Shown here: positions 6,661 to 62,784 of the stretch, in pieces | How positions within the stretch are numbered: the first letter of the stretch is position 1 | Layout: each line of letters starts with the position of its first letter | Virus record (IMG/VR): IMGVR_UViG_3300043449_002710 | Span: 124,001 to 188,000 of that record | Reading direction: 5' to 3' (one strand) | DNA: 64,000 nt | The notes under the pieces: model-generated | What the model was told of the DNA's origin: nothing | Databases searched by the model: none | What the model saw: only the letters and a program-made list of their open reading frames with translations | Made by a program: the position numbers and the translations under genes

Positions 6661-7770
6661 TTATACACGAACTCCGTGTACGCACGCTCTGCCGTTGCCG
6701 ATGGCCAAGCCCATGATTTTCTGCATGTACCAGCCGCGCTCAGGCTTGCCGATCAAGTACATATTGATCGGAGCAGTGGTCACGTCTTTACGAACCGTTT
6801 GAGCGCCGAGAACGTTCGGAGCGGAGAGGAAGTAGAATTCCCCTGCGTTCAGAACCTTCAAGGTGTCATAACGGAAGCCGTCCGTGATGAGGTTGACGCC
6901 GTAGATCGAACCCAGGGAACCCGACATGATGATCTCACGCTTGGTGACCGGATCGAAGTAGGTGGCGAATTCTGGATCAGCCAGGATGTCGTTCCAGAGG
7001 TCCATAGCAATTAATCCAGTTGCGGCTGGGTTACCCCATTGCTGGATCTGTGTACGAGCCTGAGCGAAAACGCTCGGGGAGAAAGTGGTGAAGCCGACGA
7101 GGTCGTTGTACGAAGTAGCAGCGACATCGAGGAGCGACTTGAACACTTGGTCTTCTTTCACCATGAGCTGCTCCAGGCCGTCGATGTATTTGTCATCGAG
7201 GAGGTCGCCTGGGGCCTGTTCAAGTTCACGGTCTTCGATCAGAATGTGAGCCTTGACGTAGAACTCATCTGGGAAGAGGTAGGACTGATTGATCTGGGAT
7301 GTAGCCATTCCAGAATCAGTGACAGCGTAGAAAGCCATCACGTCCTTTTTACGGATGCGCAGACGACCGATTTCGCCTTTTTTGAGGTCCTTGCGCATGA
7401 CGCACTTGCGGAGGAAGCCATCGCGACCCATAGCCTCTAAAATTTCGTCCCCTAAGACTTCCCCGACAACGCGCCATGTTTCGCCGGTCTTGTCGGCCAT
7501 AGCAGCTTCAACGAGTTCTGCACGCTGATTGGCGAACTCGTGCTGTTCCTGGACTTCGCCCGAGGTAGCAGCCAAGGCGAGAGCGCCGATACGCTGCATG
7601 AGTTCCTTTTTGGAACCAGCGTTGATTTCGCCGTTCTTGTCTTCGAAAGAACCAGCGCCAGCTTCGACTTTACCGGACTTATTGATGTGCAGAGCAGTTT
7701 TGCTCTCGGACAGTTCGTTGCCCGAACGGGTCACAACGACCGTCTTTTTTGTGTAAGGATTGGTAGCCAT
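6661..7770 (-). CDS. Major capsid protein (jumbo phage type)
   Basis: 369 aa, strongly biased codons, own terminator, HK97-like pattern (GxLGxIYGVNLITDGFR..L.VL..GE.Y); same strand as scaffold-like gene. Confidence 0.72.
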   Translation of the reverse strand: MATNPYTKKTVVVTRSGNELSESKTALHINKSGKVEAGAGSFEDKNGEINAGSKKELMQRIGALALAATSGEVQEQHEFANQRAELVEAAMADKTGETWRVVGEVLGDEILEAMGRDGFLRKCVMRKDLKKGEIGRLRIRKKDVMAFYAVTDSGMATSQINQSYLFPDEFYVKAHILIEDRELEQAPGDLLDDKYIDGLEQLMVKEDQVFKSLLDVAATSYNDLVGFTTFSPSVFAQARTQIQQWGNPAATGLIAMDLWNDILADPEFATYFDPVTKREIIMSGSLGSIYGVNLITDGFRYDTLKVLNAGEFYFLSAPNVLGAQTVRKDVTTAPINMYLIGKPERGWYMQKIMGLAIGNGRACVHGVRV

Positions 7771-7978
7771 GGTAGCTCTCCTAAAGTTGTTAGAATCGAT
7801 TCAAATTTTCAGGTTGAGCCGTAATTCAATTATTCAGGGCTACTTCCTGTCAGCAGCCTTTGGCCCTTCTTAATTGGGAAATAATACTGTGTTGGGAGGT
7901 CTTTTAATTTTTAGGTAGGAGGGGGTCTTGAGCTAATGAAAAAGGGAGATGGTGTTATCCATCTCCCTTTCATTTTGG

Positions 7979-9316: not shown

Positions 9317-9340
9317 GAGGCATTCTCCCTCGGTAGGTAA

Positions 9341-9878
9341 TTAAGGTTTATATAATAATAACCCGAGTCTAAGCTCGATCATTTGCAGGTTGCTTTCTGG
9401 AACGTAAACCCCATTTCTTCCTAACCAAATTTCAACGAAGTCATCACCAGAGTCTGTTTTGGCTACTTGTAGAGAAAATTGCAGGTTGTATGTTCCAGGG
9501 TACGCAAAAATAATATGCGATCCCGAAACAGAAACCCCATGAGCCTCGTCTGTTTGGTTATACGTGATCGTATTGATAGTGGAAGAATTTAACTGAGTAA
9601 CATTACTGAAAAAAGAACCGTAATATCCAAGCGCACCACCAGCCCCGGGCTCACCCATAGGTCCGGTAGGTCCGGTAGATCCAGTAAGTCCGGCAGGCCC
9701 ACTGGGTCACGTGGGTCCAACGACACCCATATCTCCGTCTTCGATGGCTTGCTTCAATGTTTTAGACAGACTGTTTGCTGTGACAAAAATCTTGTCGTCA
9801 TTGGTGGGAAGACGCGCTCAAACCTTGGAGAGTGAGTTCTGAGATGCTTTTGATATCTTCGTTCTGGATTTTGGACAT
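9341..9878 (-). pseudogene. Degraded collagen-containing fibre gene, paralog of 48466..48927
   Basis: MSKIQNEDIKSISEL, frameshift near 9805, then DDKIFVTANSLSKTLKQAIEDGD; in-frame TGA at 9707..9709 at a collagen Gly position; C-terminus looks truncated. Confidence 0.8.
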
Positions 9879-9915
9879 ACACTAAAAATAACAATGAAAA
9901 AGTTCCTGCTAGATG

Positions 9916-10533
9916 CTATTTAGTTTCGAGATCACTATCCCAGACGATCTTCACATTGGGTGCTTTGAGTAGGCCTGTGGGCGAAATGTAGGGCCGACCT
10001 AGACCAGCTAAATCCTCAAGATTCGCCCCGATTCGAAATTCAAAATCGGATTGATAGACCAATTCGGAGCAGTACAGCGCCTCTACTCCAAGTTGAAAAG
10101 CCGTGTCGTAAGTTGCGTTGTGGAAACTTAAGCACTTTTCAATGACCTTTTCTATGTAAGGCGGATCGAAAAAAATACACTCTAGAATCATCACTCGATC
10201 CGACTCCTTGCAGATGTCAAAGAAGTCCGACTTGGTGAAATTGGTGTGGGTCATTTCAGCCACTTCAAAAAAGTCCCCTTGAGATCTCAGTCCCACGCAA
10301 AGAGCGGCGTGGGTAAATTCGCCCCCGATCAAAACGGTGGTGAGCTTTCGCTTGTCTTTGGCGAGTAAAATATGCCCAGGCTTTAAAAATTTATATCCCG
10401 CATGATACTTCCACCCACGTAGACTTGTGTAATAAGTCGTGAAACGGATGTAAGGGATTACGTGTAACAGCAGCCATTTAAAAAATTTAGTGTTGGTAAA
10501 TCCCACGATCAATGGTTTTAAAAATTTCAGCAT
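9916..10533 (-). CDS. Permuted papain-like NlpC/P60 (YiiX/YebB-like) hydrolase
   Basis: LKPGHILL, FTHAAL (His) preceding LYCSELV (Cys). Confidence 0.75.
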   Translation of the reverse strand: MLKFLKPLIVGFTNTKFFKWLLLHVIPYIRFTTYYTSLRGWKYHAGYKFLKPGHILLAKDKRKLTTVLIGGEFTHAALCVGLRSQGDFFEVAEMTHTNFTKSDFFDICKESDRVMILECIFFDPPYIEKVIEKCLSFHNATYDTAFQLGVEALYCSELVYQSDFEFRIGANLEDLAGLGRPYISPTGLLKAPNVKIVWDSDLETK

Positions 10534-10631
10534 TGCCCACCCCTATTAAAAATAATAGCCGATCGGCATGACGCCTAGCTTCAATTTGGGATCTCGGGGG
10601 CAAGGGTATTTTTAATGTTGGAGTGCTATGG

Positions 10632-11126
10632 ATGGCAAAGGTCAAACGGAGCAAAAAAGGCAAAAAGATCTTAAAAACCAATATTCATGGGGACACCTGG
10701 ACGTATTCCGAAGTAACCCCACAAGAAATGGTCGGCATCTGTGGAGAAGAAGTTGAGGGGCTGACCAATTTGGATGAGCACCATATCTACATCAATGCGG
10801 ACTATCTTAATCAAGATGTCGTGATCCACGAATTGGTTCACGCTTACAAGAGCTATCTCTGTTTGGAGACAACCAACTTGACCGGAGAACAGCTCGAAGA
10901 GATCTATTGCGAGTTCTTCAGCAAGAACTGGCACAAGATTATCACTAAAAGTGCTCAGATCCTTTTGGATCTGCGCGACATCACTGAGTCCTCCGATGAG
11001 TTTTTAAATCTGGTGGAGTCTTTCATCCTCCTAAAAGCCTACGAGGGAAAGGGGAAAAAAACATTCACCCAAGAAGATCTTCAAGCAGCTAAACTTTTAC
11101 TGCGGGCTTTTTTAGAGACAACTTAA
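10632..11126 (+). CDS. HExxH zinc-metallopeptidase-like protein
   Basis: GLT...HIYIN...VVIHELVHAY...EE. Confidence 0.65.
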   Translation: MAKVKRSKKGKKILKTNIHGDTWTYSEVTPQEMVGICGEEVEGLTNLDEHHIYINADYLNQDVVIHELVHAYKSYLCLETTNLTGEQLEEIYCEFFSKNWHKIITKSAQILLDLRDITESSDEFLNLVESFILLKAYEGKGKKTFTQEDLQAAKLLLRAFLETT

Positions 11127-13836: not shown

Positions 13837-14574
13837 TTATCCGATCAGCATCGAGACGCGAAGCATTGCGCCCTGCAGGGAGCCAGAGAGGTCAGGCAAA
13901 GCCAAGACCTTGGCCTGAGGAAGCTCAACGCCTGCGCCACCGATTGTGATGATGCCGTTGTCACCCAAGGTGAGAGCAGCGCCAGTCGAATAGTCCTTCG
14001 AAGGATCGAACTGGTCGGTTGCGATTTCCACATAACCCTTGGCAACGCCGACCAAAGCGAAGTTACCAACGAGGTCGCGGTTGTTCAGAGCGCGTTCGTG
14101 GAAACGCTGACGAGCCTGCTGAACGGTCAGGTTATAGCGATAGAGGAAGTGAACAACCTTGCCAGCATCGCCAGCAGCGAACTTGATCCGGCCACCGACG
14201 AGGTCAACTTTCACGGTGCCTGTAGCAGGTGTAGCCGAGAAAGCGGTTTCGTCGATAGTGAGGTCAGAGCCGCCGACCACCATAGCGCGGTCTGCACCGG
14301 CCACGAGGTTAGCATTGCGGAGGTTGAACACGAGGCTGCCTGTGGCAGGAACTGTGAAAGCTTCGTTAGCCACGGCTGTAGCCGGGAGCATGTACGGGAG
14401 AAGAGCAACGCCAGCGATCTTCTCGGAACCGTCCACAGTAGCTTTCACGCTGACCTTCGAGACGCCGTTTTCAATGGCTTCAACGAGGATCACGCCTTCG
14501 TTTGCGATTTCAGCGCCAGCAGCAACCGGACGCTCAACTTGTTCCTGAATTTTGATCTGTTTACGATCGATCAT
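13837..14574 (-). CDS. Virion structural protein (head decoration/minor capsid-like)
   Basis: Follows scaffold-like gene, SD AAGGAG, biased codons, beta-rich. Confidence 0.55.
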   Translation of the reverse strand: MIDRKQIKIQEQVERPVAAGAEIANEGVILVEAIENGVSKVSVKATVDGSEKIAGVALLPYMLPATAVANEAFTVPATGSLVFNLRNANLVAGADRAMVVGGSDLTIDETAFSATPATGTVKVDLVGGRIKFAAGDAGKVVHFLYRYNLTVQQARQRFHERALNNRDLVGNFALVGVAKGYVEIATDQFDPSKDYSTGAALTLGDNGIITIGGAGVELPQAKVLALPDLSGSLQGAMLRVSMLIG

Positions 14575-14630: not shown

Positions 14631-16703
14631 TTATCGTCTGGTGGACTTCAAGCCCATCTGCGAGCGGATAACTTCACGATTCTCTCCGCTCACGCTTCCA
14701 CCCATCGCAATGGCGCTGACCGAACTCTTCACGAGGCGGTCAACGAGGCTTTCTTCTTGCTCAGGTTCGCTGCCTTGGACATCAATCTTGCCCGAAGCAG
14801 AGATGGTCTTTTCGAGGGATTCCCGAGCTTCTTTCGGCATGTCCATCATTTCGACGGCTTTATCCATGACGAAGTTGAAGTATTCAGGGGCCGATTCGAA
14901 ACCTGCTTCAATAGCCCAAACAGCGTGCTGCTCGGTCAGACCAGCTTGCACTAAGGCATTGAACAGACCGCCTTTGAGAGCGTGGCGACCTTCTTCCTGA
15001 TAAAAGTTCTTGTCTGCAGCAGCCATCACGGTGCCCACAGCGCGGAGGAAGTCCGAACGGAGTGTGCCGATCTTTTCTTCCATCTCAGCCTTAGCTTCGA
15101 GCTTGGCCTTTTCGCGGATACGAGCAGTGATAGCAGACTCGTCAATCTGGTGCGCGAAGAACTTGGCCTGAACCATCGGCAAGATTTTCTTAGCGCCCAT
15201 TTCACCGATCAGCTTGCCTAAGTTGTCAGCGTAAGCTTCGGTGGTGAAGCTAGCGCGGATCGAGGCTGCGTCATTCTGGTCAGCAAGATGAATGCGAGCG
15301 ACCGGCTCACCATCGATCATCACGTTCCAGAACGGATTTTCGGAGTCTTCGCCGTAGAGGCTCATCTCGACTTTTTCGCCTTTGAGAGCTTCCATGGAAG
15401 CCAAGAATTCCGTCTTCATGCTGAGAGCTTCTTCTTCAGCGGGGATTTCTTCAGCGGCTTCAGCAGGTGCATCACACATTTCTTCAGCGCCTTCGGCTTT
15501 TTTCTCTTCGTGCTCTTCGCCTTCTTCAGCGATCTCAAAGCTCACAGGTTCTTCGACGAGAATCTCAGGAGCCACGAATTCGAGTTCCTTTTTGGCTTCT
15601 TCAGCAGCTTCCATGTCTTCGGAGGCCAGAGCCTTGAGTTCAGCGCGAACCTGAGCGCGGACAGATTTAGAGTGAAGAGTCTTTTCAACTTCAGCGCAGA
15701 TCTTAGCAAGTTTAGGATGCTTCTTCACTTCGGCAAACTTGTCGGCATCGACAGTGGCCATGACGCGAAGTTCGCGCTTGAGAGCCATCAGAGTCTTGGC
15801 ATCGAAAGCTTCAGCTTTGGCTTCCATTTTAGCTTTGGCTTCAGCTTTGGCTTTCACAGCTTTACGAGCTTTGTATTTAGCGAAAGCGGCCTGGAGTTTT
15901 TCTTTCTTCTCAGCCTTGGCTTTTTCTTCTTTTTCGGCTTCGGCTTTAGCTTTTTCAGCCTTCTCAGCTTCTTCTTTTTTAGCAGCTTCGTCAGCTTCAG
16001 CTTTCACAGGAGCTTTAGCCAATTCGTCCATCGGCTTGATCTCTTGAACCTTGACTTCAGGTTCCATCATCTGAGCTTTTTCAGCTTTTTCATGGGTGTG
16101 AGTCTGAGCTGGTGTTTCAGCCTTCATCGCTTCTTTAGCGATATCCTTGGCGTCAGATCCGACTTTCAGAGGTTCTTTAGCTTTTTCTTCAGCAGCTTTA
16201 ACGTTGGTGGACATTTGTTTCTCCTGTAGTTTCGAGTAAACTGATTTTACTTTTTCGATCGCCCCGTCCATTGCCGAAGCACAGTGCGGACAGTGTACCT
16301 TTTCCGATTCAAGCGCCGAAGCCACTGAGATACAAAGTTCTGAGCGGCAATGCGGGCACTTATACAGCTCACTTGCTTCTTCCAACTGAGCGAGGAGGGC
16401 TTGACGCTCTTCCTCAGTCAGTTCGGCTGTCAACTGCATGGGAGAGCCATCCACCATGCTGAACATTTTTGATGCTTTAATTCCGATCTGAGTGAACCCG
16501 CTGGTATCTTGGTAGGCTCCATAAGAACCACCAAAATCGGGCGGCGGTCCAACGTAGGCATACCCACCCACGCCGTTGGCGTAATTGCCAGGACCAATCG
16601 GGTTTAATTGAACAGGTTTCTGGATCAAAGGATTGTAAGTAGAACTACGACCCTCAACCTGAATCTTTTCTTTGATTTTAGACATCAACTCTTCACGGTT
16701 CAT
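14631..16703 (-). CDS. Prohead core/scaffold-like protein
   Basis: Very A/E/K-rich coiled coil, two CPHC knuckles, many hydrophobic-x-A/S motifs. Confidence 0.6.
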   Translation of the reverse strand: MNREELMSKIKEKIQVEGRSSTYNPLIQKPVQLNPIGPGNYANGVGGYAYVGPPPDFGGSYGAYQDTSGFTQIGIKASKMFSMVDGSPMQLTAELTEEERQALLAQLEEASELYKCPHCRSELCISVASALESEKVHCPHCASAMDGAIEKVKSVYSKLQEKQMSTNVKAAEEKAKEPLKVGSDAKDIAKEAMKAETPAQTHTHEKAEKAQMMEPEVKVQEIKPMDELAKAPVKAEADEAAKKEEAEKAEKAKAEAEKEEKAKAEKKEKLQAAFAKYKARKAVKAKAEAKAKMEAKAEAFDAKTLMALKRELRVMATVDADKFAEVKKHPKLAKICAEVEKTLHSKSVRAQVRAELKALASEDMEAAEEAKKELEFVAPEILVEEPVSFEIAEEGEEHEEKKAEGAEEMCDAPAEAAEEIPAEEEALSMKTEFLASMEALKGEKVEMSLYGEDSENPFWNVMIDGEPVARIHLADQNDAASIRASFTTEAYADNLGKLIGEMGAKKILPMVQAKFFAHQIDESAITARIREKAKLEAKAEMEEKIGTLRSDFLRAVGTVMAAADKNFYQEEGRHALKGGLFNALVQAGLTEQHAVWAIEAGFESAPEYFNFVMDKAVEMMDMPKEARESLEKTISASGKIDVQGSEPEQEESLVDRLVKSSVSAIAMGGSVSGENREVIRSQMGLKSTRR

Positions 16704-16931: not shown

Positions 16932-17096
16932 CTATTTCACATCGTTATAGACGAAAACCAAAACAAAGAAAGCCACCAAGAGAGAAACCCCCAGAGAGAA
17001 GAAAATATAGGCAATCGCTCCGGCCATTAAACCGACAACGCCAGCAATCTTTAGGTTAAAAAGAAACACTTCCATCTTATTGTTTTCATTTTCCAT
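16932..17096 (-). CDS. Small membrane protein
   Basis: Two hydrophobic segments after MENENNKMEVFLF; SD GAGG. Confidence 0.5.
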   Translation of the reverse strand: MENENNKMEVFLFNLKIAGVVGLMAGAIAYIFFSLGVSLLVAFFVLVFVYNDVK

Positions 17097-19270: not shown

Positions 19271-19335
19271 AAGTCAATATTATCAATATAAATATAAATA
19301 TCAATGAAAAATAAATAAAAAATAATCTAATGGAA

Positions 19336-19536
19336 TCAATTGCTTGCGGGTCTTTTTTCCTTGAGCCAATTGTGAACCCAAGGCTCATCCCACTCCGAGT
19401 CTGCTTCTGGACCGTAAACAATGGTGTGGGTTGCTTCTTGATAAAGGTCATGCGAGTATCTCACGTTGTTCACTTCGCAAAACTCGTGAACTAATTCCTT
19501 GGTGAGCATCTCCAGTTTTTGTTTCATGTAACTCAT
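19336..19536 (-). CDS. Small hypothetical protein
   Basis: ORF in operon position. Confidence 0.45.
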   Translation of the reverse strand: MSYMKQKLEMLTKELVHEFCEVNNVRYSHDLYQEATHTIVYGPEADSEWDEPWVHNWLKEKRPASN

Positions 19537-19539
19537 GAT

Positions 19540-20112: not shown

Positions 20113-20127
20113 ATAGCCCTCTTTCTT

Positions 20128-21000: not shown

Positions 21001-21021
21001 TTCTCCTTTATTTTTTTTTGG

Positions 21022-30941: not shown

Positions 30942-31286
30942 ATGAGCAAGCCTTTGACTAAAGACGAGATTTTCAAAAAGCTGATGAACCGTTACAAAGA
31001 AAAGGACTCAAAAATTTTGAAGGAAGTGGCGTACAATCTTTGCTTGGCTTCCACAACTGAAGCCTCGCTTGAAGAAAGAGCGTCTCGCGCTTTGAATAGA
31101 ATTCAAGCTACGCCCAGACCGCAAGAGCCGTTGAAGCAAATGGCAGCCAAGCAGCATCAGAACAAGCTCAGTGTTTGTGGGATCTGCAAGATGCCGATGA
31201 AAACGGTAAAATTACTAGAGGATCGTTCCGCTTATTACTGCCCTGACCATCGAGTCACCGTGCCGTTCCCTAAGGACGAGGAATAA
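30942..31286 (+). CDS. Small zinc-ribbon protein upstream of portal (start corrected)
   Basis: MSKPLTK after GTTATTTTTAAGGGT; CGIC...YYCPDH. Confidence 0.7.
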   Translation: MSKPLTKDEIFKKLMNRYKEKDSKILKEVAYNLCLASTTEASLEERASRALNRIQATPRPQEPLKQMAAKQHQNKLSVCGICKMPMKTVKLLEDRSAYYCPDHRVTVPFPKDEE

Positions 31287-31287: not shown

Positions 31288-33543
31288 ATGTTTAAGTTTG
31301 GAAAATACGCGACTCCTAAGGGTCCTTATCAAAAATATCAAGACCCCTTGAGTTATGTCTCTAGCTCGGTAGCGAACAAAGGCTCTGTTGCAACCGCCAG
31401 CAAAAAGACACGCATTCAATCGAACTACACACCTACCCTTAGCGGAACTGATCCCAACAGTTCTTTCACCTCGGGTGGGGCGAATATTGGTGGGGGCAAC
31501 GGCGGATACAACTCGGATCGCTACAATCCGGTCTTTGATAATCTTGAGGAAGGAACAATCCTAGAGGATTGGATACCGAGAGACGCAGCCGGGCTAGATC
31601 TCTTATACCGCCGCATCTATTTGCGTGACCCAACGCTCGGCCCTGGGATTGATATCATCCGAAATTTGCCTTGGTCTGATTTCACTTTAGAAGGGATCGA
31701 GGACAACGAAATAAAAAAGATTTACGAAGAATGTATGTCTTCGCTCAATCCCATGCTTCTCATGCCTGATATCACGCATGAGTTTTTGGTTTTGGGTCGG
31801 TCCATCTCCTCTCTTATCTTTGACCATAAGCGTGGCATCTTTTCAGGCGTGGTTCCCCATGACCCAGACTTCGTGAGAATCACTCCGGTTCCAGTTTATG
31901 GATTTGACCCGATGTGCGATTTCACCTTGTCGCCTGGGTTTAAAAAGTTTCTTCAGAGCCAAGACCCTAGAGCCGTCGATGCTCGAAAGTCTTTGCCCCC
32001 CTCGTTCTTGGAAGCAGCCGCCAATCAACAAGGGTTCTTGCCGCTCGATCCGATCTCCACGATCTACCTTTCACGGAAAGCCGCGCCAAACGATTCGATT
32101 GGAACCAGCATCCTGACCCGCACTCTTTATTTTTGGGCGATTGAAAAAGCGCTGTTGAACGCCCAGCTTTCGTCCACTCGAAGACGAGCCCGCTCCTTCA
32201 TTCATTTGAAAGCCGGGATCGACAATATGTGGGAGCCTTCCCCAGAGGAGATCGACGCCCTTGCAGGCATTGTGATTCAAGCCAATGAAGATCCTGTGGG
32301 CGGAGTCATTGCCACCCGTACCGGAGTTGAGATCAGTGAGCCTGTGAGTGGTGGAGCGGATTTTTATAAATGGAGCGATGAGCTGGAACTTTTCGCAAAA
32401 TACAAAATGCAGTGTATCGGGATCTCCGATGCACTTTTAAGTGGAGACGCAACCTACGCAAATGCGGATCAAGCTCGATCTGTTTTTGTGGAAAATTTAG
32501 CTTCTCTCCGCTCTAGGATTGTGAACAAGTTTTTCATGCAAAAGCTTTTTCCTGTCGTGGCACGAGTCCATGGATTTGTAAAAAGAACGCCTGCTGAATT
32601 GAGTCATCGGATTCGAACTACTTCTGCCTTTGACGGCCCTCGGTTCCCAAGCTGGGCTCAAACGACGATGATCACATCTGAAAAACTCACTCAGCGCAAG
32701 GTCATGAGCTTACCGATCGAAAACTTAATGATCCCTACGATCAACTGGGCTAAGCAGCTTAAGCCCACCCAAGATGAAAAGGCTTTAGAAATTTTGGAGC
32801 GGCTCAAACAAAACGAGTACCCGGTGACTCTCAGCCAGTGGGCGAGCGCTGCGGGCTTAAACCCTAAAACAATCGAGCAAGAGCAAAAAGACAATCTCGA
32901 TCTTCAGAATCGAATTCAAAAGCTTCAAGAAGCCATGGCCCCGCAAGAGGCCGAGACTAGCGACTCGGGTGAAGATTTGGGAATGGATATTCCAGAAGCT
33001 TCCGACGAACAGCCTGCAGGCGAAGAGGCTCCCGCTGAAGAACCTGTCCAGCAATCGGTTTACGCTAAGGCTAAAAGAATTGCCAAAGGCGGACCTGTTG
33101 CAAGAATTGATCAAATCGCGATTTGGAACCATGGTAAATGCGGTGGATTGAGTAAAAAAGACGCTCAAAAAGTGACCAGTTCTTTATTGAAGGATTCCAA
33201 TCCTGGGATCTTTAAAGACCCAAGGGCCTTGTTGAATAAGCTTCAAGACAAAGTGGGTTCTGAGCGGGCTCCGATCCTAGCTTATGTACTGAATCGGTTG
33301 GGGTTGACTTCTTTCATGATTGATTCGAAATCGGCTCAAGTCATTGCCAAGTCGGCAAGAGATAATCTGAACCGGTATTCGTCTTTTTCTAGTGAGAAAG
33401 CTATGCTCGATGTCAGGCGTTACGAGACAGAGATTCAGGCTCTTTCTCGATACGCAGAAAAAATGCGTTTGAATCAGAGTCAGTTCAAGGCAAAATTGGC
33501 ACCGCCCCCGAGCATTGATTCTAAAGTTATGGGTGGCTATTAA
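31288..33543 (+). CDS. Portal protein
   Basis: YRRIY.RDP..G..IDI...LPWSDF, EFLVLG, IGISDALLSGDATYAN pattern; near terL. Confidence 0.78.
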   Translation: MFKFGKYATPKGPYQKYQDPLSYVSSSVANKGSVATASKKTRIQSNYTPTLSGTDPNSSFTSGGANIGGGNGGYNSDRYNPVFDNLEEGTILEDWIPRDAAGLDLLYRRIYLRDPTLGPGIDIIRNLPWSDFTLEGIEDNEIKKIYEECMSSLNPMLLMPDITHEFLVLGRSISSLIFDHKRGIFSGVVPHDPDFVRITPVPVYGFDPMCDFTLSPGFKKFLQSQDPRAVDARKSLPPSFLEAAANQQGFLPLDPISTIYLSRKAAPNDSIGTSILTRTLYFWAIEKALLNAQLSSTRRRARSFIHLKAGIDNMWEPSPEEIDALAGIVIQANEDPVGGVIATRTGVEISEPVSGGADFYKWSDELELFAKYKMQCIGISDALLSGDATYANADQARSVFVENLASLRSRIVNKFFMQKLFPVVARVHGFVKRTPAELSHRIRTTSAFDGPRFPSWAQTTMITSEKLTQRKVMSLPIENLMIPTINWAKQLKPTQDEKALEILERLKQNEYPVTLSQWASAAGLNPKTIEQEQKDNLDLQNRIQKLQEAMAPQEAETSDSGEDLGMDIPEASDEQPAGEEAPAEEPVQQSVYAKAKRIAKGGPVARIDQIAIWNHGKCGGLSKKDAQKVTSSLLKDSNPGIFKDPRALLNKLQDKVGSERAPILAYVLNRLGLTSFMIDSKSAQVIAKSARDNLNRYSSFSSEKAMLDVRRYETEIQALSRYAEKMRLNQSQFKAKLAPPPSIDSKVMGGY

Positions 33544-38824: not shown

Positions 38825-39586
38825 TCAAGATTTTTTCACTAATTGACGTGCATATTCTTTTGAGCCGTAAGCTTCTTCGAAATACTTCTGAAGCTTAGCG
38901 GATTCGTTTGGAGCTTTTTCAGCAGCTTGCGCTTGAAGATCCAAAACCGCTTCTTTGGCGATCACGGCTTCCTTGCCTTCTTTGGTCTTGGCTTTGAAGC
39001 CGCCTTTGATGGAAGCTGTGATTTCGAGAGGCTGAACTTCGCCTTTGAAGTAAGCTTTCACTAAATCGCCTGCGCCGATCATCTCTTTGGCAATCGCAAC
39101 AGAGGCGAGAGAGACTGAAGGGGTTTCGGTAACGAACATCCGGTTACGGCGAGCAGCAATGATCTGCTCGATGTTTTCTTTGCCGATCTTGGCTAGGACT
39201 TTCTTACCGTCCTGATCTTTGACTTCCCAGTGGTCGCCCAAGGCATTGTCGAGGTACATCATGCCTGCAATCACAGGGGTCATCTTCGACTTGTCCTGAG
39301 CTTCGCTCATTTCACGAGTCGGGACATTGAGCTTGGCCACGATCGAAACCGAGGTCGGCTTGATCGAGCAAGAAGCCATGACTGGCATGATCTTGCCTTC
39401 GAAAGTCTTGGCGAAAAAGCGTTCAATGTCATCACCCTTGGGGCGACCGAGCTTCGGTTCATATTCAATCAGAACGTGTGCGGAAACGGCATCCAATTTT
39501 TGGAAGTCCGCAATGTCCAAGTCCCCTCTGACGCCTGTAGCGAAAGAGGCTGCGACGACTTTTTTGTAGACCCTGTCAAAATTCAT
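38825..39586 (-). CDS. Putative head/core structural protein
   Basis: Biased codons, late-type motif, SD AAGGAG, several hydrophobic-x-A motifs. Confidence 0.55.
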   Translation of the reverse strand: MNFDRVYKKVVAASFATGVRGDLDIADFQKLDAVSAHVLIEYEPKLGRPKGDDIERFFAKTFEGKIMPVMASCSIKPTSVSIVAKLNVPTREMSEAQDKSKMTPVIAGMMYLDNALGDHWEVKDQDGKKVLAKIGKENIEQIIAARRNRMFVTETPSVSLASVAIAKEMIGAGDLVKAYFKGEVQPLEITASIKGGFKAKTKEGKEAVIAKEAVLDLQAQAAEKAPNESAKLQKYFEEAYGSKEYARQLVKKS

Positions 39587-56468: not shown

Positions 56469-56915
56469 GTGGCAAAAAAAACTCGCCTTAAAAACTATCC
56501 GAGTCTTGAAATGGTTTTATCCATGGCCTTTAGTCGGGACCGTTGGGTGGACAAAGTTAGGCACCGGTTAGAGGGGGCTTTGGGCGAATACGCCAAGCAG
56601 AAGTTTGCCGAAGCCATTGGATACACGGGTTGGGATTGGACCATTGAAGTAGAAACGATTCTGGCAGGTGTTTCGGACTTAATGAACACTAAAAAAGTTC
56701 AAACCAAAACAAAATTTGACCGCAAAAAAGCTTTCCAAGAAGCTTACCAAGATGCTCAGGGCAGTTATGATCAAATCGTCCACGCTCGAAACACCTTGTG
56801 TAGAGAGCATCCATTCAACATGGAACAATACCAAAGAATTAGGCTTGTAAAACTAGATGCCGATACTTTGCTTAGAGAAATGGTTCTTAAATTTCTCCCG
56901 GGGATTTTGAATTAA
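56469..56915 (+). CDS. YP-tagged hypothetical protein
   Basis: KNYPSLEMVLS. Confidence 0.7.
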   Translation: MAKKTRLKNYPSLEMVLSMAFSRDRWVDKVRHRLEGALGEYAKQKFAEAIGYTGWDWTIEVETILAGVSDLMNTKKVQTKTKFDRKKAFQEAYQDAQGSYDQIVHARNTLCREHPFNMEQYQRIRLVKLDADTLLREMVLKFLPGILN

Positions 56916-56962: not shown

Positions 56963-57547
56963 ATGTCTTACTCTAAAAAGTTGATTCAGATTAGGTCCAA
57001 GAAAAACTGGAGCCAGGAAAAGCTGGCCTCCCACCTGAATGTCAGTTTCGCTACCGTGAATCGATGGGAAAATGAAAAATCTGAACCGCAAAGAGAAGCC
57101 AGAGAGTCGATTGATGTTTTGTGGGGAAGCCTACAAGAAGAAAACTACCCTGCCCTCAACCAAGTCCTCGCGCATTCGAAAAGATCCAAGCTCACCATTC
57201 TTTTGGACGAGAACCTTTTTCAGCTCAAGCCAGCCCTAAAAGACTCTGGGTTTAAAGTCATCTTAATGAAAAAAGGAACCTCCGACGAGGAGATTAGGGA
57301 GCTTGCCGAAGGCACTGCCATCCTCACAACTAATTCCAAAGACTTTATTCCCCACGCTGTCGCGGACGATTTCGATGTCATCTCGGCGGAACTGATCAAG
57401 TTCATCGATACTGAGCCCACTCGTAAAAACCAGACGGTTCAAAAGATAGCCAAAGCCATTCGAGAAAGTGGGATGGTTTTCACCCGTGGTAATTTCAATT
57501 TAGTCGTCCGAGATGACGGATCTTACGAACTCAAACCTTTAGTCTAA
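56963..57547 (+). CDS. XRE HTH fused to PIN-like (DUF5615/Mut7-C-type) domain
   Basis: SQEKLASHLNVSFATVNRWENEKSEP; ILLDENL..SDEEIRELA..ILTTNSKDF. Confidence 0.82.
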   Translation: MSYSKKLIQIRSKKNWSQEKLASHLNVSFATVNRWENEKSEPQREARESIDVLWGSLQEENYPALNQVLAHSKRSKLTILLDENLFQLKPALKDSGFKVILMKKGTSDEEIRELAEGTAILTTNSKDFIPHAVADDFDVISAELIKFIDTEPTRKNQTVQKIAKAIRESGMVFTRGNFNLVVRDDGSYELKPLV

Positions 57548-58120: not shown

Positions 58121-58132
58121 ACTGATGTTTTA

Positions 58133-58624: not shown

Positions 58625-59125
58625 TCACCGCTTCTTAAGCTTGGCCTTTTTCATGGTCGGGTATTCCATCTCCGCTTTAGCGCGAGCTTTTTTAGCTAAA
58701 GTTTCTTTTTCCTTTTTAGTCAACCGCTTCACTTTGGCTTTAGAAGCTTTTGCTCTTTTTCCCTTTTTGACTTTGGCTTCGATGACTTCCGAAACAGAAG
58801 CAAAGATCGAGGCAAGTCCTGGGTAGCGATTGGAATCCACTTGAACCTTGGTCACCATTTCTTTGACTGCACCACTTTTCTTCACAAGATTCTCCAGTAC
58901 GGGTTCAATCGCTTCCAAGGCTTCGTCTGCCCACTTGCGGTCGAGATCCTTGGTGGTTTCTTCAAGCTGATCGTAAGGAACAAAAGATTGCTCCCAACGA
59001 GCGCTGCGCTCGGCACTAACTTCGGCTTTGACAGCCTTTGCCCAGTGAACCCACGCCTCGTGAAAAACTTCAGCCAAGGATTCTTTGATCTGATCTTTTG
59101 TTTCTTTGTCCATTTTAAACCTCAA
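58625..59125 (-). CDS. RyR-like domain protein with YP tag and basic tail
   Basis: LAEVFHEAWVHW..FVPYDQLEETTKDLDR; YPGLASIFAS. Confidence 0.65.
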   Translation of the reverse strand: MRFKMDKETKDQIKESLAEVFHEAWVHWAKAVKAEVSAERSARWEQSFVPYDQLEETTKDLDRKWADEALEAIEPVLENLVKKSGAVKEMVTKVQVDSNRYPGLASIFASVSEVIEAKVKKGKRAKASKAKVKRLTKKEKETLAKKARAKAEMEYPTMKKAKLKKR

Positions 59126-62100
59126 ACATCTTCGTAGGTGCCGTCTTCGAAAAGAATGCCCACATGATAGCCTTTGTCGATGTGCTCTTCGGCGAGATCC
59201 ATGGCTTCTTCGTAGGTTTTAACTTTGACTTCTTTTTTTCCTTCACCTTTTTTATCAAGGATGACAGTCAGTTCTTCATCTTTCGCGGAAGCTTCTGCCT
59301 GATTGTCATATTTCTCGATGATCGACCCGATGTCAGTATACAAGAATTTATTCTTTTCTCGGTCATATACAACGGTCAAGTTGTAGGTATCGCCCGAGTT
59401 AATATACTGAAATCTTGGACGGGTCGGATTGCTTTCATTCGGGTCGTAGGCTTCCACACCGTGGTATCCCACTAAATCAGAAACGTGCTCCAAGATATTT
59501 TCGACATAGCTAGCTGGGTTATAAGTATTGTGCTTTTTGTCGTAATATCTTTCGCCGTTCTCATAGGCTTTTTTAGCTTCAGCCATGGCCGCTTTCAATT
59601 CTTCCAAGGTGGTTGAGGCTTGCGTTTTATAATAAGAAGACTCCACAACAGATATCTGAATATCCCCAATAATCTTCTTAATGGTTTCAATCGCCAAATT
59701 CGGATCGACCTTACCTGGAATCTTAAGAATGCTATCGTCGTCAAAGGAGATGCCAGAGACGCCTAAAGCTTTCTCGATTTTTTTGATCTGATCCAAAGAG
59801 ACTTTGTCAAAACCAATTTTGAGTGCAAAAGCGGTTTCTGAAGCAGAGGCTTGCGTTTTATAAGAAGACTCCGCAGTGAATCCGTCAAACCAATCACCGA
59901 ACTCTTCGGTGTGTTTGACATTCTCAGGTTTTTCACAAGTCTTAGAGCTAGTCTCGTCGTCGTTGCACCACTCTTTCGCTTCTTCCAAAGACAGCCCTTT
60001 TTTCATGACTTTTTGAGGGTGGCCTTCTTTATAAAAGCGAACGATCTTGTAGGTTTTTTCTTCTTCTTCTTCTTCCTCGTCTTCATCTGAGGAGGCTTCA
60101 ATTTTCTCGCTAGAAAGGTATTCCACCAAGTCGTCAGCCACAACCGATCCATCGGCTTCGATCACGACCGGAACACCGGCTTCTGGATCTTCACCCATGG
60201 ACTCAGCCCAGAAGATATAGACTTCATCGGGTTTAGCGGCATACTCGACCCCACGCTGAACTTCCATCAGGTCTGGGAGATCGCCCACTTTGGGTTCTTC
60301 GATGATGGTTTCATTTCCGGCCTTATCGACCAGGATGAGCTGGCAGCCTTCCATCACCTCGTCATCACCAAGCTGAAAGTAGTCTCCACGATTAGAGGAA
60401 ACTTCATCTCCGTTCTCATCGATGAGAACAGCGCTCTTATACTTCACAGCGGGGTTTTCTTTAACTGGGCCTGAGAAGAAAAAATCTTTCACCCAGAGGC
60501 GATCAATCTTGTCGCTGTCTTTGAACACGTCGATGTAAGTGCCTTGATACTTATCGAATTCGCGGTGTTCGCATTCAAAGCCATGCTTCTCAAGTTCTTT
60601 ACAGATCTTGTCAAAAGTCTCGTGATCGTAATCCTGATCGGCTTCGCCAGTGGCTTCAATCCGAACAGCGGCTTGCACCGAAGATTTGCTGGTCAATTCC
60701 ATAGTGTTGCCTTTGTCGTCCTCAATGTGTTTTCCGAACGGGCTAGAGTCTTTGACCCATTTCCAGTTGCCGGTCCCAAAAAACTTGTTTGCTTTGATTT
60801 CGGCAGCTTTAGTTGGATCGCCAGAGATCAAAACCTCCCAAGGCTTTCCGATCTTAGCGGAGTCTTCGTCATAGATATGGATGCGGTCGAATTCTTTGGC
60901 AAGATTCGGGAAAGGATCGGACTCCGCCGACTTGACGGCTTTTTTGGCGGCAGATTCCATTTTGTAAGGGCTCACATTGCCGTGATCACTCACGTACCAA
61001 ACGTTAGGCCAAAAGTTATGCTTTTGCATCCAAGCCTTGGCAGCGGCTTCTGCTTCCTCTGCCGTATTGAACTCGCCAAGGAATTCCCCATTTTTAATAG
61101 AGACAGAAATCTTTGATCCTAGTGGGCCTGAGTCAGAAAAAATAATGTCCTGGTCGTCAGGTTGATCATCTTGAAATTCTTCTTCTTCGGATTCTTCTTC
61201 TTCGGATTCTTCCGTAGCCGAAAGAACACCGTGTTCATAAACGTCTTCAGCAAATTGATCGAAATCCATCCGATCTTCGATTGAATAGTCTTGATCGAGT
61301 TTGTACTGCTGGTACATGGATTCAAGCTCTGTGAGGTTTTCTTTTAACCAAGCTTCAAAATCGGTTAGTTCTTCCACGAGTTCTCCGCCTTCCCAGTCTT
61401 CTTCAGCACCACTTTTAACTTTGTTTTCAGTCTTGGCTGTCCACATATCTTGGTTCTCGCTGTCTTCTGGCTTGGTGGTGATGATCAGAGAGTTCCCATC
61501 CACGTCACTCCACTCTGGAATAAGAGTGGGGTAGGTTTTCTTGGTTTTGAATCTCCAGAAAAAATCCGTAAGGTTATCCGCAAACTTTTCTACTCTATGC
61601 GGGTCAGCCAAGATGTCTCCGAGTTCCAAAGCCATCTTACCTTCGCCAAGCTCTTTCAAAGAGTATTCACCGTGGAGTTCTTTATCCAAAAAGATTTCCA
61701 ACGTGGTTTTGAACTTCTTCAAATCCGAATCCGAATCGTCTTCGGCTCCACCCACAGCTTGATTTCCATTTTTAGGCAGCCTAACCATTCGGCTGTGTCC
61801 GGTGAAACCAAATTTCTTATAAAATGTTCTTAATTTTGAAATCGGCATTTTGTTTTTCTCTTTAGGTACGGGCTGTAAATCAAGAATCACGCCATACTTA
61901 TCCGCTAAATCTACAATAAACTGCATTGCTCTTGTGCCTTGGCCTTGTCTTGGTTCTAAGGCTTGAATCCACTTCAGAGCAACTGAGCGTTCCCCTTTGG
62001 GTCCACCCAGCCAAGGTCTCAACTCGATCACCGCTTCATTGTTAAAAATTCTAATTTTATTTTCAAATGGGTGTGGCTGGGTTTTTCCCCAGACATCCTT

Positions 62101-62784
62101 CATAAATTTATCAATATTATCCGACTTCAAATCGGCTGGGCTAGCCTCTTGATCTGTTCGCAAGCGGAGTTTAAGTTTTTGAGTTTCGGAAGAGGTCAGC
62201 ATCTTTACACTCTTTCCAAACTTGTCTTTAAGATGAGATGCGACTAGCCCCAAAAGATTCTTATTAAAAGGGGCATCCCTGTCATCGGATGCGAATTTCT
62301 TAATGCCCATTTTAGCAAGCTTGGTCCAGTCCAAAAGGGCTTTAGCTTCAGGGGCCGCTTCCTTCTTGTGCTTCTCGGCCAAGGCTTTGGCCATCTCAGA
62401 GATCTCTTCGTCTCGGGCGATTTGGTTCACTAGATCCCTGACCTGATCCCGATAGCCGCCTGGAAGCTTCTCTGGCATCGAAGTGTTGAAAAACTCTTCT
62501 GGCTTCTGCTCGATCTTCCAACCCGAGGAACTGGCAATTTGTTCCAAGTATTTGGTGTGCTTCGAGGTGGTTCGAGAATACTTCTTCTCGTTGACGTAGA
62601 GAAGATCGCTTGGCGCATCGCGTTTAGCGATAATGGTGCGATAGCTGTAAAGGGTGTCGCCCTTGGCCCAGATGATATCTCCGTCTTTGCCTACGCTTTC
62701 GCCGGTAGATAACCAAGAACGAATCAAGCCTTCTTCTTTGGCCCCAGCCATAGCCTTCTCAGCCACAATCTTTTGTCTTGCCAT
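59122..62784 (-). CDS. Large acidic modular polyprotein-like protein including a GNAT domain
   Basis: RQGQGTRAMQFIVDLADKYGV...LRTFYKKFGF; domains separated by hydrophobic-x-A/S/G acidic linkers. Confidence 0.7.
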   Translation of the reverse strand: MARQKIVAEKAMAGAKEEGLIRSWLSTGESVGKDGDIIWAKGDTLYSYRTIIAKRDAPSDLLYVNEKKYSRTTSKHTKYLEQIASSSGWKIEQKPEEFFNTSMPEKLPGGYRDQVRDLVNQIARDEEISEMAKALAEKHKKEAAPEAKALLDWTKLAKMGIKKFASDDRDAPFNKNLLGLVASHLKDKFGKSVKMLTSSETQKLKLRLRTDQEASPADLKSDNIDKFMKDVWGKTQPHPFENKIRIFNNEAVIELRPWLGGPKGERSVALKWIQALEPRQGQGTRAMQFIVDLADKYGVILDLQPVPKEKNKMPISKLRTFYKKFGFTGHSRMVRLPKNGNQAVGGAEDDSDSDLKKFKTTLEIFLDKELHGEYSLKELGEGKMALELGDILADPHRVEKFADNLTDFFWRFKTKKTYPTLIPEWSDVDGNSLIITTKPEDSENQDMWTAKTENKVKSGAEEDWEGGELVEELTDFEAWLKENLTELESMYQQYKLDQDYSIEDRMDFDQFAEDVYEHGVLSATEESEEEESEEEEFQDDQPDDQDIIFSDSGPLGSKISVSIKNGEFLGEFNTAEEAEAAAKAWMQKHNFWPNVWYVSDHGNVSPYKMESAAKKAVKSAESDPFPNLAKEFDRIHIYDEDSAKIGKPWEVLISGDPTKAAEIKANKFFGTGNWKWVKDSSPFGKHIEDDKGNTMELTSKSSVQAAVRIEATGEADQDYDHETFDKICKELEKHGFECEHREFDKYQGTYIDVFKDSDKIDRLWVKDFFFSGPVKENPAVKYKSAVLIDENGDEVSSNRGDYFQLGDDEVMEGCQLILVDKAGNETIIEEPKVGDLPDLMEVQRGVEYAAKPDEVYIFWAESMGEDPEAGVPVVIEADGSVVADDLVEYLSSEKIEASSDEDEEEEEEEKTYKIVRFYKEGHPQKVMKKGLSLEEAKEWCNDDETSSKTCEKPENVKHTEEFGDWFDGFTAESSYKTQASASETAFALKIGFDKVSLDQIKKIEKALGVSGISFDDDSILKIPGKVDPNLAIETIKKIIGDIQISVVESSYYKTQASTTLEELKAAMAEAKKAYENGERYYDKKHNTYNPASYVENILEHVSDLVGYHGVEAYDPNESNPTRPRFQYINSGDTYNLTVVYDREKNKFLYTDIGSIIEKYDNQAEASAKDEELTVILDKKGEGKKEVKVKTYEEAMDLAEEHIDKGYHVGILFEDGTYEDV

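What the first reader, a model, noticed from the sequence alone, without database searches (positions are those of the whole stretch)
6661..62784. Recurrent hydrophobic-x-A/S/G motif suggests a prohead-protease cleavage code
Seen: motifs such as VEA, INA, VKA, IKA, IRA, VMA, IQS, ITS, ITA, IQA, IEA and IVA cluster in charged linkers or leaders. They occur in the MCP N-terminus (VEAGAGS, INAGSK, VEAAM), scaffold (more than 10), portal ends (IQSN, ITSE, VYAK), 38825..39586, 30942..31286, the NTase leader (HVIEA-GILD) and 59122..62784. Several YP tags end in such a motif (ILA-S, VLA-S, IFA-S). Known: T4 gp21 cuts after L/I-x-E and phiKZ gp175 after S/A/G-x-E. Inference: a different specificity, cutting after a small residue, marks the head proteins and removes the tag. 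The motif is short and low in information, so chance matches are certain. No protease gene is visible in this window.
Basis: inference. Interest (0 to 1): 0.65.

Follow-up and report, generated by a model that had tools for sequence, protein, structure and literature searches.

The report
Candidate head-protease cut sites and tags

Summary
The window is the head-assembly region of a 223-kb PaBG/Lu11-like jumbo myophage. I confirmed these genes:
- major capsid protein (MCP), 6661-7770(-)
- a 690-aa scaffold-like protein, 14631-16703(-)
- a 245-aa virion protein
- terminase
- portal, 31288-33543(+)

The prohead protease lies 4.7 kb beyond the window's end and has the T4 gp21 / herpes assemblin fold.

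[VIL]-x-[ASG] exceeds chance only in the scaffold-like protein (49 observed vs 30 expected, z 4.6, top of 207 proteins). It is marginal in the MCP. It is not enriched in the portal, the NTase, the 210-aa protein or the 1220-aa protein.

Four conserved features carry the idea:
- h-N-A at MCP residues 49-51, kept in 98% of 117 homologs.
- V-L-G and V-L-A islands in the protease's disordered leader.
- The "YP tag" ([KR]-[YF]-P-x-L-x-x-[VI]-L-small): 15 copies against 0.5 expected, with tagged genes directly downstream of the protease gene in four genomes.
- A V-x-A excess in the scaffold family.

The pattern resembles the herpes assemblin site (h-x-A|S) and T4's capsid-targeting sequence.

Against it, a cut at INA removes only 13% of the MCP, while homology points to a boundary near residue 76, where a T4-type V-Q-E|Q site sits. 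Verdict: plausible, partly supported, unproven.

The parts
6661..7770 (-). Major capsid protein, 369 aa, HK97 fold
   Evidence: phrog_2522 E 9e-55. tblastn matches the PaBG, Lu11-group and BcepSauron MCPs at 30-36% identity. PDB 6wkk (phage G gp27) matches residues 80-362.
7546..7770 (-). MCP residues 1-75: N-terminal extension absent from the phage G MCP; likely propeptide
   Evidence: The PDB chain of phage G gp27 (282-aa gene) aligns only from about residue 76-80. The AF2 model has low confidence up to residue 110, with helices at 54-69 and 78-92. PaBG's MCP loses about 20% on maturation (PMC7412058).
7600..7632 (-). Most conserved island of the MCP leader: G47-[ED]-[IFLMV]-N-A-x-[SND]-K-K-[DE]-L57. 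I49-N50-A51 is encoded at 7618-7626.
   Evidence: In 117 homologs (38-91% identity), position 49 is hydrophobic in 117/117, N50 is kept in 115/117 and A51 in 112/117. It is the only conserved h-x-small site in residues 1-100.
14631..16703 (-). Scaffold-like protein, 690 aa: N-terminal zinc-ribbon region, Ala/Lys/Glu-rich linker, conserved C-domain.
   Evidence: It is syntenic and homologous with the Afa-NA1 'ATPase' and PaBG gp082, which sit upstream of the 245-aa protein and the MCP. [VIL]x[ASG]: 49 vs 30, z 4.6. V-x-A is the top i/i+2 residue pair. 28 homologs have mean z 2.6.
14631..15419 (-). Conserved C-terminal domain of the scaffold-like protein (residues 429-690). It starts M-K-T-E-[FWY]-L-A-S and holds conserved L-V-K-S-S about 32 residues from the basic C-terminus.
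   Evidence: Alignments. Short homologs (315-333 aa) consist of this domain plus an acidic leader.
13837..14574 (-). 245-aa virion structural protein (PaBG gp081 type)
   Evidence: phrog_16710 E 5e-19. 30% identity to the Afa-NA1 structural protein. No motif excess and no leader.
31288..33543 (+). Portal protein, 751 aa
   Evidence: phrog_16240 E 2.5e-106. Motif count is at chance, z 0.9.
1712..1741 (-). YP tag YPTLEKILAS at residues 4-13 of the 123-aa protein 1379-1750
3042..3071 (-). YP tag YPTVEKVLAS at residues 3-12 of the 141-aa protein 2652-3077
3473..3502 (-). YP tag YPTVEKILAS in ORF 3074-3601. The likely true start is the Met three codons upstream.
56496..56525 (+). YP tag YPSLEMVLSM at residues 10-19 of the 148-aa protein 56469-56915
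57146..57175 (+). Internal YP tag YPALNQVLAH between the HTH domain and the DUF5615-like domain of 56963-57547
58796..58825 (-). Internal YP tag YPGLASIFAS after the RyR domain of 58625-59125
9916..10533 (-). Peptidase_C92 (permuted papain-like) ORF between the scaffold-like gene and the MCP. It is not the prohead protease.
   Evidence: PF05708 E 1.6e-8. The same family lies near the MCP in L012 and near a tag cluster in L020.
10623..11126 (+). 167-aa ORF with the only HExxH motif (HELVH) in the genome's called proteins
   Evidence: No Pfam family.

Best explanation
The window carries the head module of a PaBG-like jumbo phage. Its prohead protease has the T4 gp21 / herpesvirus assemblin fold and lies outside the window at G000:C1:192702-193469.

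I propose that this protease recognises sites with a hydrophobic residue at P3 and a small residue at P1, roughly [VIFLM]-[L/N/x]-[A/G/S] followed by a small residue. This is the assemblin type rather than the Glu type of T4 and phiKZ.

Proposed sites:
- The conserved h-N-A in the MCP's removable N-terminal extension, probably one of several cuts.
- V-L-G and V-L-A in the protease's own disordered leader (self-processing).
- Many V-x-A/S sites in the scaffold-like protein (clearance of the scaffold).
- The end of a 12-residue N-terminal tag, [KR]-[YF]-P-x-L-x-x-[VI]-L-[A/S/G/T].

The tag is carried by about 15 otherwise unrelated small proteins. It would act like T4's capsid-targeting sequence, delivering cargo to the prohead before being cut off.

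Shown: gene identities, protease fold, motif statistics, conservation, and the linkage of tagged genes to the protease gene. Inferred: that any of these peptides is cut, where, and that tagged proteins enter the head.
For: Protease:
- phrog_18299 E 3e-42.
- The AF2 model matches T4 gp21 (Z 9.7, rmsd 3.3, 131 residues aligned) and VZV protease (Z 8.2). Herpes proteases top the Foldseek list.
- H118, H131, S175 and E225 are invariant.
- Residues 1-43 are disordered. They carry conserved V7-L-G (96%) and V31-L-A (92%) and no conserved Glu-type site.

MCP:
- I49-N-A51 is kept as h-x-small in 98% of 117 homologs and is the most conserved element of the leader.

Scaffold-like protein:
- z 4.6, top of 207 proteins.
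- V-x-A is the top of 400 i/i+2 residue pairs, and V-x-S and V-x-A rank high in a distant homolog.
- All 28 homologs have positive z, mean 2.6.

Pooled test:
- Head proteins 1.29-fold, fibres and enzymes about 1.0.

Tags:
- 15 observed vs 0.5 expected.
- Synonymous codons vary, so the conservation is at peptide level.
- The residue after the tag core is small in 18/21 instances found without constraining it.
- Tags are present in relatives L009, L012, L019, L020 and L021.
- The gene directly downstream of the protease is tagged in four genomes, and L020 has five tagged genes near the protease, four of them consecutive small genes directly downstream.

Precedent:
- Herpes proteases cut after Ala in h-x-A|S/T; PrV has YLQA-T and VQA-S (PMC4498786).
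- Phage prohead proteases share that fold (Cheng 2004, cited in PMC10052503).
Against: - No experimental terminus exists for this clade.
- A cut at INA removes only 13% of the MCP mass (10.8% in PaBG), against about 20% reported for PaBG (PMC7412058). The part homologous with phage G's MCP, whose 282-aa gene matches its 280-residue solved chain, starts near residue 76.
- At that boundary sits V73-Q-E75|Q76, a T4-type site, and PaBG has I-I-E|Q at what appears to be the homologous position.
- The nearest structural neighbour is T4 gp21, whose characterised relatives all cut after Glu.
- Scaffold enrichment is mostly in a conserved folded C-domain. The N-terminal and linker parts of divergent homologs average z about 1.1.
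- Offset -2 is also raised.
- Conserved h-x-small sites are no more frequent than control patterns in the scaffold-like protein or in the folded parts of the MCP and protease.
- The distant homologs PaBG gp082 and Afa-NA1 show no excess.
- The tag core predicts an amphipathic helix, so its conserved end may be a docking surface rather than a scissile bond.
- Four tags are internal to their proteins.
Confidence: 0.38

Rival explanations
1. The protease keeps the Glu specificity of its T4/phiKZ relatives. The MCP would be cut after E75 (V-Q-E|Q) or nearby Glu residues. The conserved h-x-small islands and the YP tag would be docking helices or assembly contacts for scaffold, portal or protease, not scissile sites.
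For: - The best structural match is T4 gp21 (Z 9.7).
- V73-Q-E75|Q76 lies exactly where homology with the 282-aa phage G MCP begins, and a cut there gives 19.2% mass loss, matching PaBG's roughly 20%.
- PaBG has I-I-E|Q at what appears to be the homologous position.
- [LIVMF]xE occurs in the boundary segment of 56/117 homologs against 39 expected.
Against: - Glu occupies the position-75 column in only 42/117 homologs, and half the homologs have no h-x-E in the boundary segment.
- No conserved [LIV]xE or [SAG]xE site exists in the MCP leader or the protease leader.
- Only about a third of the tags contain Glu.
- Pfam S77 does not detect this protease.
Confidence: 0.27
2. There is no cleavage code. 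The tripeptide is too low in information. The scaffold excess reflects the packing pattern of an Ala-rich helical domain inherited by all homologs, and the other matches are chance. The protease's specificity is something else or is context-driven, as in HK97.
For: - About 4.5% of all positions match the motif genome-wide (3184 matches).
- Offset -2 is also raised in the scaffold family, and the enrichment sits in the conserved C-domain.
- Control patterns give as many conserved sites.
- The second genome-wide outlier is a leucine-rich-repeat artefact.
Against: - The leader islands in the MCP and the protease, and the tag end, all converge on h-x-small.
- The tag's small residue is kept in 18/21 instances found without constraining it, against a rough background estimate of 29%.
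- Tagged genes cluster with the protease gene.
Confidence: 0.25
3. The YP tag is handled by another enzyme or system, not the prohead protease. Candidates are the Peptidase_C92-like protein, the HExxH ORF, or the MoxR-vWA pair in the window. Alternatively it is a targeting or interaction motif unrelated to the head.
For: - C92-family genes lie near the MCP in this phage and in L012, and near the tag cluster in L020.
- Iyer et al. 2021 propose that MoxR-vWA(-metallopeptidase) processes virion proteins in group 2.2 jumbo phages.
- Tagged proteins carry HTH, PIN-like, RyR and LRR domains typical of host-directed factors.
Against: - The vWA protein here has no HExxH.
- The tightest linkage of tagged genes is to the prohead protease gene.
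- The protease's own leader carries the same V-L-[AG] ending.
Confidence: 0.1

Closest known systems
Herpesvirus assemblin (maturational protease) and its h-x-A|S sites
   Same: Same fold class: VZV Z 8.2, HCMV Z 6.3. Invariant Ser and two His residues. The proposed sites have a hydrophobic P3, a small P1 and often Ser/Ala at P1'. The MCP's I-N-A resembles V-N-A|S type M-sites (the consensus is from my own knowledge; PrV YLQA-T and VQA-S are in PMC4498786).
   Different: The protease is not fused to the scaffold; the two genes are about 52 kb apart. The candidate sites lie in the MCP leader, in cargo tags and in the protease's N-terminus rather than at a scaffold C-terminal M-site. No cleavage has been shown.
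T4 gp21 prohead protease with the capsid-targeting sequence (CTS) of internal proteins
   Same: It is the closest structure (5jbl, Z 9.7). In both systems a short N-terminal tag is shared by unrelated small proteins. T4's CTS (Mullaney and Black 1996, cited) ends in the protease's own motif. Self-processing of the protease leader is also expected in both.
   Different: T4 cuts after Glu in L/I-x-E. Here the conserved tag end is [VI]-L-[A/S/G/T] and Glu is not conserved. Pfam S77 does not match. The MCP is a 369-aa HK97-type protein, not gp23-like.
phiKZ gp175 / SPN3US gp245 (S/A/G-x-E)
   Same: These are jumbo-phage head proteases that remove N-terminal propeptides from many head and ejection proteins (PMC10052503).
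   Different: They belong to a different phage lineage and MCP type. Their Glu at P1 has no conserved counterpart in the leaders examined here.
HK97 gp5 delta domain and gp4
   Same: An HK97-fold MCP carries a removable N-terminal extension, which is cut by an assemblin-fold protease and probably at several sites.
   Different: The extension here is only about 75 residues, and a separate 690-aa scaffold-like protein exists. Pfam S78 does not match.

Membership tests
gp21/assemblin-fold prohead proteases | Assemblin-like beta-barrel fold | tested here: met
   AF2 model, pLDDT 77. VIA Z 9.7 to T4 gp21 (131 residues, rmsd 3.3), 8.2 to VZV protease, 6.3 to HCMV protease. Foldseek's top hits are herpes proteases, but with weak E-values of 0.04-0.2.
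gp21/assemblin-fold prohead proteases | Conserved His and Ser catalytic residues | tested here: inconclusive
   H118, H131, S175 and E225 are invariant in 26 homologs. Which of them form the triad was not established by superposition.
Pfam Peptidase_S77 (T4 gp21) / S78 (HK97 gp4) | Match to the family HMM | tested here: not met
   No match anywhere in the genome at E<=1. No Pfam hit for the protein at E<=0.1. Only PHROG 18299 matches.
Glu-specific T4/phiKZ-type cleavage | Cuts after Glu in L/I-x-E or S/A/G-x-E | not testable with these tools
   No conserved site of this kind occurs in the MCP or protease leaders, but V-Q-E|Q sits at the predicted boundary.
Assemblin-type cleavage (h-x-A|S) | Cuts after Ala or another small residue with hydrophobic P3 | not testable with these tools
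   Conserved candidate sites are I-N-A in the MCP, V-L-G and V-L-A in the protease, and the tag ends. There is no proteomic data.
Assemblin-type system | Protease fused in frame to the scaffold protein | tested here: not met
   The protease is at genome position 192702-193469 and the scaffold-like gene at 138631-140703. They are separate genes.
T4-like capsid-targeting sequence | Short N-terminal peptide shared by otherwise unrelated proteins | tested here: met
   15 matches against 0.5 expected. Conservation is at peptide level. The carriers have diverse domains. The tag is present in five related contigs.
T4-like capsid-targeting sequence | Tagged proteins are packaged in the head and the tag is removed by the prohead protease | not testable with these tools
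   The only support is the genomic linkage of tagged genes to the protease gene.
HK97-fold MCP with removable N-terminal domain | HK97 fold plus an N-terminal extension lost on maturation | tested here: inconclusive
   The fold is met. The extension is shown by comparison with phage G. Its removal is inferred from PaBG only (PMC7412058).

The most novel reading that the evidence does not exclude
A clade of uncultivated PaBG-like jumbo phages uses a gp21-fold prohead protease with herpesvirus-assemblin-like specificity (hydrophobic-x-small|small). It pairs this with a 12-residue N-terminal 'YP' tag that works like T4's capsid-targeting sequence. The tag would load about 15 or more diverse host-directed cargo proteins (LRR, RyR, HTH-PIN-like and others) into the head and would then be clipped off.
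Probability: 0.25. Interest if true: 0.75.

Novelty: new variant of a known kind. Interest (0 to 1): 0.5.

Why it matters
As far as I know, and from what I found in the literature, every characterised gp21-like phage head protease cuts after Glu, while the related herpesvirus enzymes cut after Ala. A phage enzyme with the herpes-type rule would add substrate specificity to the known fold-level link between the two lineages.

A short, portable tag that sends arbitrary proteins into a jumbo-phage head would be useful for identifying ejected anti-host proteins directly from sequence. It could also serve as a packaging handle. Both ideas can be tested with one recombinant protease and a few peptide or fusion substrates.

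Tried and rejected
- Megablast of the MCP region against the phage collection gave no match.
- The search for related loci with the single MCP in viral contigs found no relatives.
- Pfam S77 and S78 searches of the whole genome gave nothing.
- The ORF at 17086-17907 sits at the syntenic 'protease' position of Afa-NA1 but is not homologous to that protease.
- 4809-6566 is a Mom-like + GIY-YIG endonuclease, not a portal.
- 7979-9316 lies next to the MCP but is not scaffold-like.
- The second genome-wide motif outlier (genome 189556-190416) is a leucine-rich-repeat artefact.
- The distant scaffold homologs PaBG gp082 and Afa-NA1 show no enrichment.
- A conservation test found no excess of conserved h-x-small sites over control patterns in the scaffold-like protein or in the folded parts of the MCP and protease.
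- The 245-aa virion protein has no leader or informative motif.
- The vWA protein lacks the metallopeptidase domain described for group 2.2 phages.
- Papers on PaBG, the Dickeya phages, Matilda and phage G give no mapped termini.
- The Gonzalez 2020 phage G structure paper is not held.
- PHROG and Pfam scans of the tagged proteins gave no head-related annotation.
Full report
**Context**

The window is G000:C1:124001-188000 of a 223,260-bp virus record judged 81% complete. Using the MCP and the protease as tblastn queries, it belongs with the PaBG / Lu11 / phiRSL1 / Erwinia Y3 / Dickeya JA / BcepSauron jumbo myophages at 30-41% identity. Nothing close is in the phage collection.

Genes confirmed in the window:
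- MCP, 6661-7770(-), phrog_2522.
- Portal, 31288-33543(+), phrog_16240.
- Large terminase, 25931-29035(+).
- A 245-aa virion protein, 13837-14574(-).
- A 690-aa scaffold-like protein, 14631-16703(-). It is homologous and syntenic with the 'ATPase' genes that sit upstream of the structural protein and MCP in Afa-NA1 and PaBG.

The ORF 4809-6566 is a Mom-like + GIY-YIG endonuclease.

**The protease**

In Afa-NA1 the gene order is protease, 'ATPase', structural protein, MCP. The ORF at that position here (17086-17907) is unrelated to the Afa-NA1 protease. The Afa-NA1 protease instead finds a 255-aa protein at genome 192702-193469(+), 4.7 kb beyond the window's end.

That protein matches PHROG 18299 'head maturation protease' at E 3e-42. 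It matches no Pfam family, including S77 and S78.

An AF2 model built from 26 homologs (pLDDT 77) has a disordered N-terminus (residues 1-43) and a well-folded core. Its best structural neighbours are T4 gp21 (Z 9.7) and the VZV, HCMV and KSHV proteases (Z 8.2, 6.3, 5.7). Herpes proteases also head the Foldseek list, with weak E-values. H118, H131, S175 and E225 are invariant.

The window does contain a Peptidase_C92-like ORF (9916-10533) and an HExxH ORF (10623-11126).

**Is the motif more than chance?**

[VIL]-x-[ASG] matches about 4.5% of all positions (3184 in the proteome). Against local 20-residue shuffles:

| Protein | z |
|---|---|
| Scaffold-like, 690 aa (49 observed vs 30 expected) | 4.5-4.7 |
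| MCP | 2.2 |
| 253-aa protein, 38825-39586 | 1.9 (up to 2.8 with whole-protein shuffles) |
| Portal | 0.9 |
| 863-aa protein | 0.9 |
| 245-aa protein | 0.1 |

With whole-protein shuffles, the 210-aa protein (z 0.1), the NTase (z -1.0) and the 1220-aa protein (z 0.5) are also at chance. The scaffold-like protein is the top of 207 proteins. For it, offset +2 gives 49 while offsets ±1, ±3, ±4 and -2 give 21-34. The runner-up in the genome-wide ranking is a leucine-rich-repeat protein, where the signal is a repeat artefact.

In an unbiased scan of all 400 i/i+2 residue pairs, V-x-A is the top pair in the scaffold-like protein (12 vs 5.3). V-x-S and V-x-A rank second to fourth in a roughly 35%-identical homolog.

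Pooled observed/expected ratios:
- Core head proteins: 1.29 (z 4.1).
- Core head proteins without the scaffold-like protein: 1.17 (z 2.1).
- Fibre proteins: 1.03.
- Enzymes: 0.97.

**Replication in homologs**

All 28 scaffold homologs (51-100% identical in the C-domain) have positive z, with mean 2.6 and 17/28 above 2. Four caveats apply:
- The signal lies mostly in the conserved, presumably folded C-domain, so the homologs are not independent.
- The fast-evolving N-terminal and linker parts average only z about 1.1.
- Offset -2 is also raised.
- Sites conserved as h-x-small are no more numerous than control patterns: 19 against 18, 19 and 15.

The distant homologs PaBG gp082 and Afa-NA1 show no excess. 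The scaffold signal is therefore real, but it may be structural.

**Conserved instances in the leaders**

In 117 MCP homologs (38-91% identity), the most conserved element of the first roughly 85 residues is G47-[ED]-h-N-A-x-[SND]-K-K-[DE]-L. Position 49 is hydrophobic in 117/117, N50 is kept in 115/117 and A51 in 112/117. It is the only conserved h-x-small site in residues 1-100, and no conserved [LIV]xE or [SAG]xE site exists there.

In 'LVEAAM' the invariant residue is A90, and its P3 position is not hydrophobic.

In the protease's disordered leader, the conserved islands are I-V-L-G-[TSA] (residues 6-10) and F-V-L-A-[SA] (residues 30-34). There is again no Glu-type site.

**The YP tag**

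The pattern YP-x-h-x-x-h-h-[ASG] occurs 15 times in called proteins, against 0.5 expected (maximum 4 in 200 shuffles). Synonymous codons vary freely, so this is a peptide motif, not a DNA motif.

Most copies lie 2-10 residues from the N-terminus. Four are internal, at domain junctions. The carriers are otherwise unrelated and include HTH + DUF5615, RyR, leucine-rich repeats and a weak Tpt1/KptA match.

I then repeated the search without constraining the final residue and allowing [YF]P. In 21 N-terminal instances from this genome and its relatives, the next residue is A 13, S 3, T 1, G 1. The three exceptions look like hydrophobic non-tags.

Tags also occur in contigs L009, L012, L019, L020 and L021. 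The gene directly downstream of the protease gene is tagged in this genome and in L019, L020 and L021. L020 has five tagged genes near the protease, four of them consecutive small genes directly downstream.

**Interpretation**

Taken together, these features fit a protease that recognises hydrophobic-x-small. That is the rule of the herpes assemblins: PrV has YLQA-T and VQA-S (PMC4498786), and the general (V/L/I)-X-A|S consensus is from my own knowledge. The enzymes share the fold.

The tag parallels T4's capsid-targeting sequence, which ends in gp21's own motif (Mullaney and Black 1996, cited). This parallel is my inference, not a tested result.

**What argues against**

- A cut after A51 removes 13.2% of the MCP mass here and 10.8% in PaBG. 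PaBG's MCP is reported to lose about 20% (PMC7412058).
- The phage G MCP gene encodes 282 aa, and its 280-residue PDB chain aligns to our MCP only from about residue 76-80. Residues 1-75 are therefore an add-on, and the mature end is probably near residue 76.
- At that point sits V73-Q-E75|Q76, a T4-type L/I/V-x-E site giving 19.2% loss. PaBG has I-I-E|Q at what appears to be the homologous position.
- However, Glu fills that column in only 42/117 homologs, and only 56/117 have any h-x-E in the boundary segment.
- INA could be one of several cuts inside the propeptide, or it could be a docking motif.
- The tag core (Pro-capped, with Leu and Ile/Leu on one face) may be a binding helix whose small last residue is structural.
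- I found no mapped termini for this clade in the literature.

**Verdict**

Most of the listed matches (portal, NTase, 210-aa, 1220-aa, VEAGAGS) are chance. The tag-protease linkage and the conserved leader islands are the parts worth testing at the bench.

Noticed in passing
window 1712-1741, 3042-3071, 3473-3502, 56496-56525, 57146-57175, 58796-58825; elsewhere in the genome, e.g. G000:C1:40824, 48876, 86155, 120638, 189580, 199587, 200248: A 12-residue peptide tag, [KR]-[YF]-P-x-L-x-x-[VI]-L-small, sits at or near the N-terminus of about 15 unrelated proteins. It occurs 15 times against 0.5 expected and is also found in related contigs. In four cases it lies between domains, often about 10 residues after an internal Met, which hints at internal starts or polyprotein-like processing.
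   Followed up: partly
G000:C1:193541-193693 (outside the window); L019:10778-11101; L020:10770-11099; L021:~10783-10995: The small gene immediately downstream of the prohead protease gene carries the tag in four genomes. L020 has five tagged genes near the protease, four of them consecutive small genes directly downstream.
   Followed up: partly
window 9916-10533 (-) and 10623-11126 (+): A Peptidase_C92 (permuted papain-like) ORF with a hydrophobic N-terminus and a divergently oriented 167-aa HExxH (HELVH) ORF lie between the scaffold-like gene and the MCP. C92 genes recur near the MCP (L012) and near a tag cluster (L020).
   Followed up: partly
window 17861-22134 (-): A cluster of MoxR AAA+ (21022-22134), DUF6744 (20128-21000), S-AdoMet lyase-like (19540-20112) and vWA (17861-19270) genes sits next to the scaffold-like gene. 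Iyer et al. 2021 describe MoxR-vWA-metallopeptidase pairs in group 2.2 jumbo phages, but the vWA protein here has no HExxH.
   Followed up: partly
window 4809-6566 (-): A 585-aa fusion of a Mom-like DNA-modification domain, a GIY-YIG nuclease and several HTH domains lies directly downstream of the MCP. It is probably a homing endonuclease insertion.
   Followed up: no
window 7979-9658 (-): Two Ser/Asn/Thr-rich ORFs (445 and 105 aa) with no family match are inserted between the 245-aa virion protein and the MCP. In relatives these two genes are nearly adjacent.
   Followed up: no
window 46997-48415, 49008-49847, 49860-51224 (-): Three collagen-repeat (G-P-T) proteins. Two of them share a similar N-terminus (MAY..IRNKT), so they are likely fibre paralogs.
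   Followed up: no
window 25931-29035 (+): The large terminase is 1034 aa, and its PHROG match is split into two stretches (137-416 and 481-1021). Relatives carry intein or LAGLIDADG signatures in the same gene (L008, L012), so an intein or other insertion may be present.
   Followed up: no
window 30124-30212 (-): A single tRNA-Leu (anticodon TAA) lies just upstream of the portal region.
   Followed up: no
window 14631-14730 (-), scaffold-like residues 657-690: A conserved L-V-K-S-S-V-S lies about 32 residues from the basic C-terminus of the scaffold-like protein. From memory, it resembles the HCMV release site Y-V-K-A|S-V-S. This is a lead only and is probably coincidence.
   Followed up: no
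G000:C1:189556-190416 (outside the window): A YP-tagged 286-aa protein is made of about 21-residue leucine-rich repeats (NQLTSLEGAPxxVGGxFxC).
   Followed up: no
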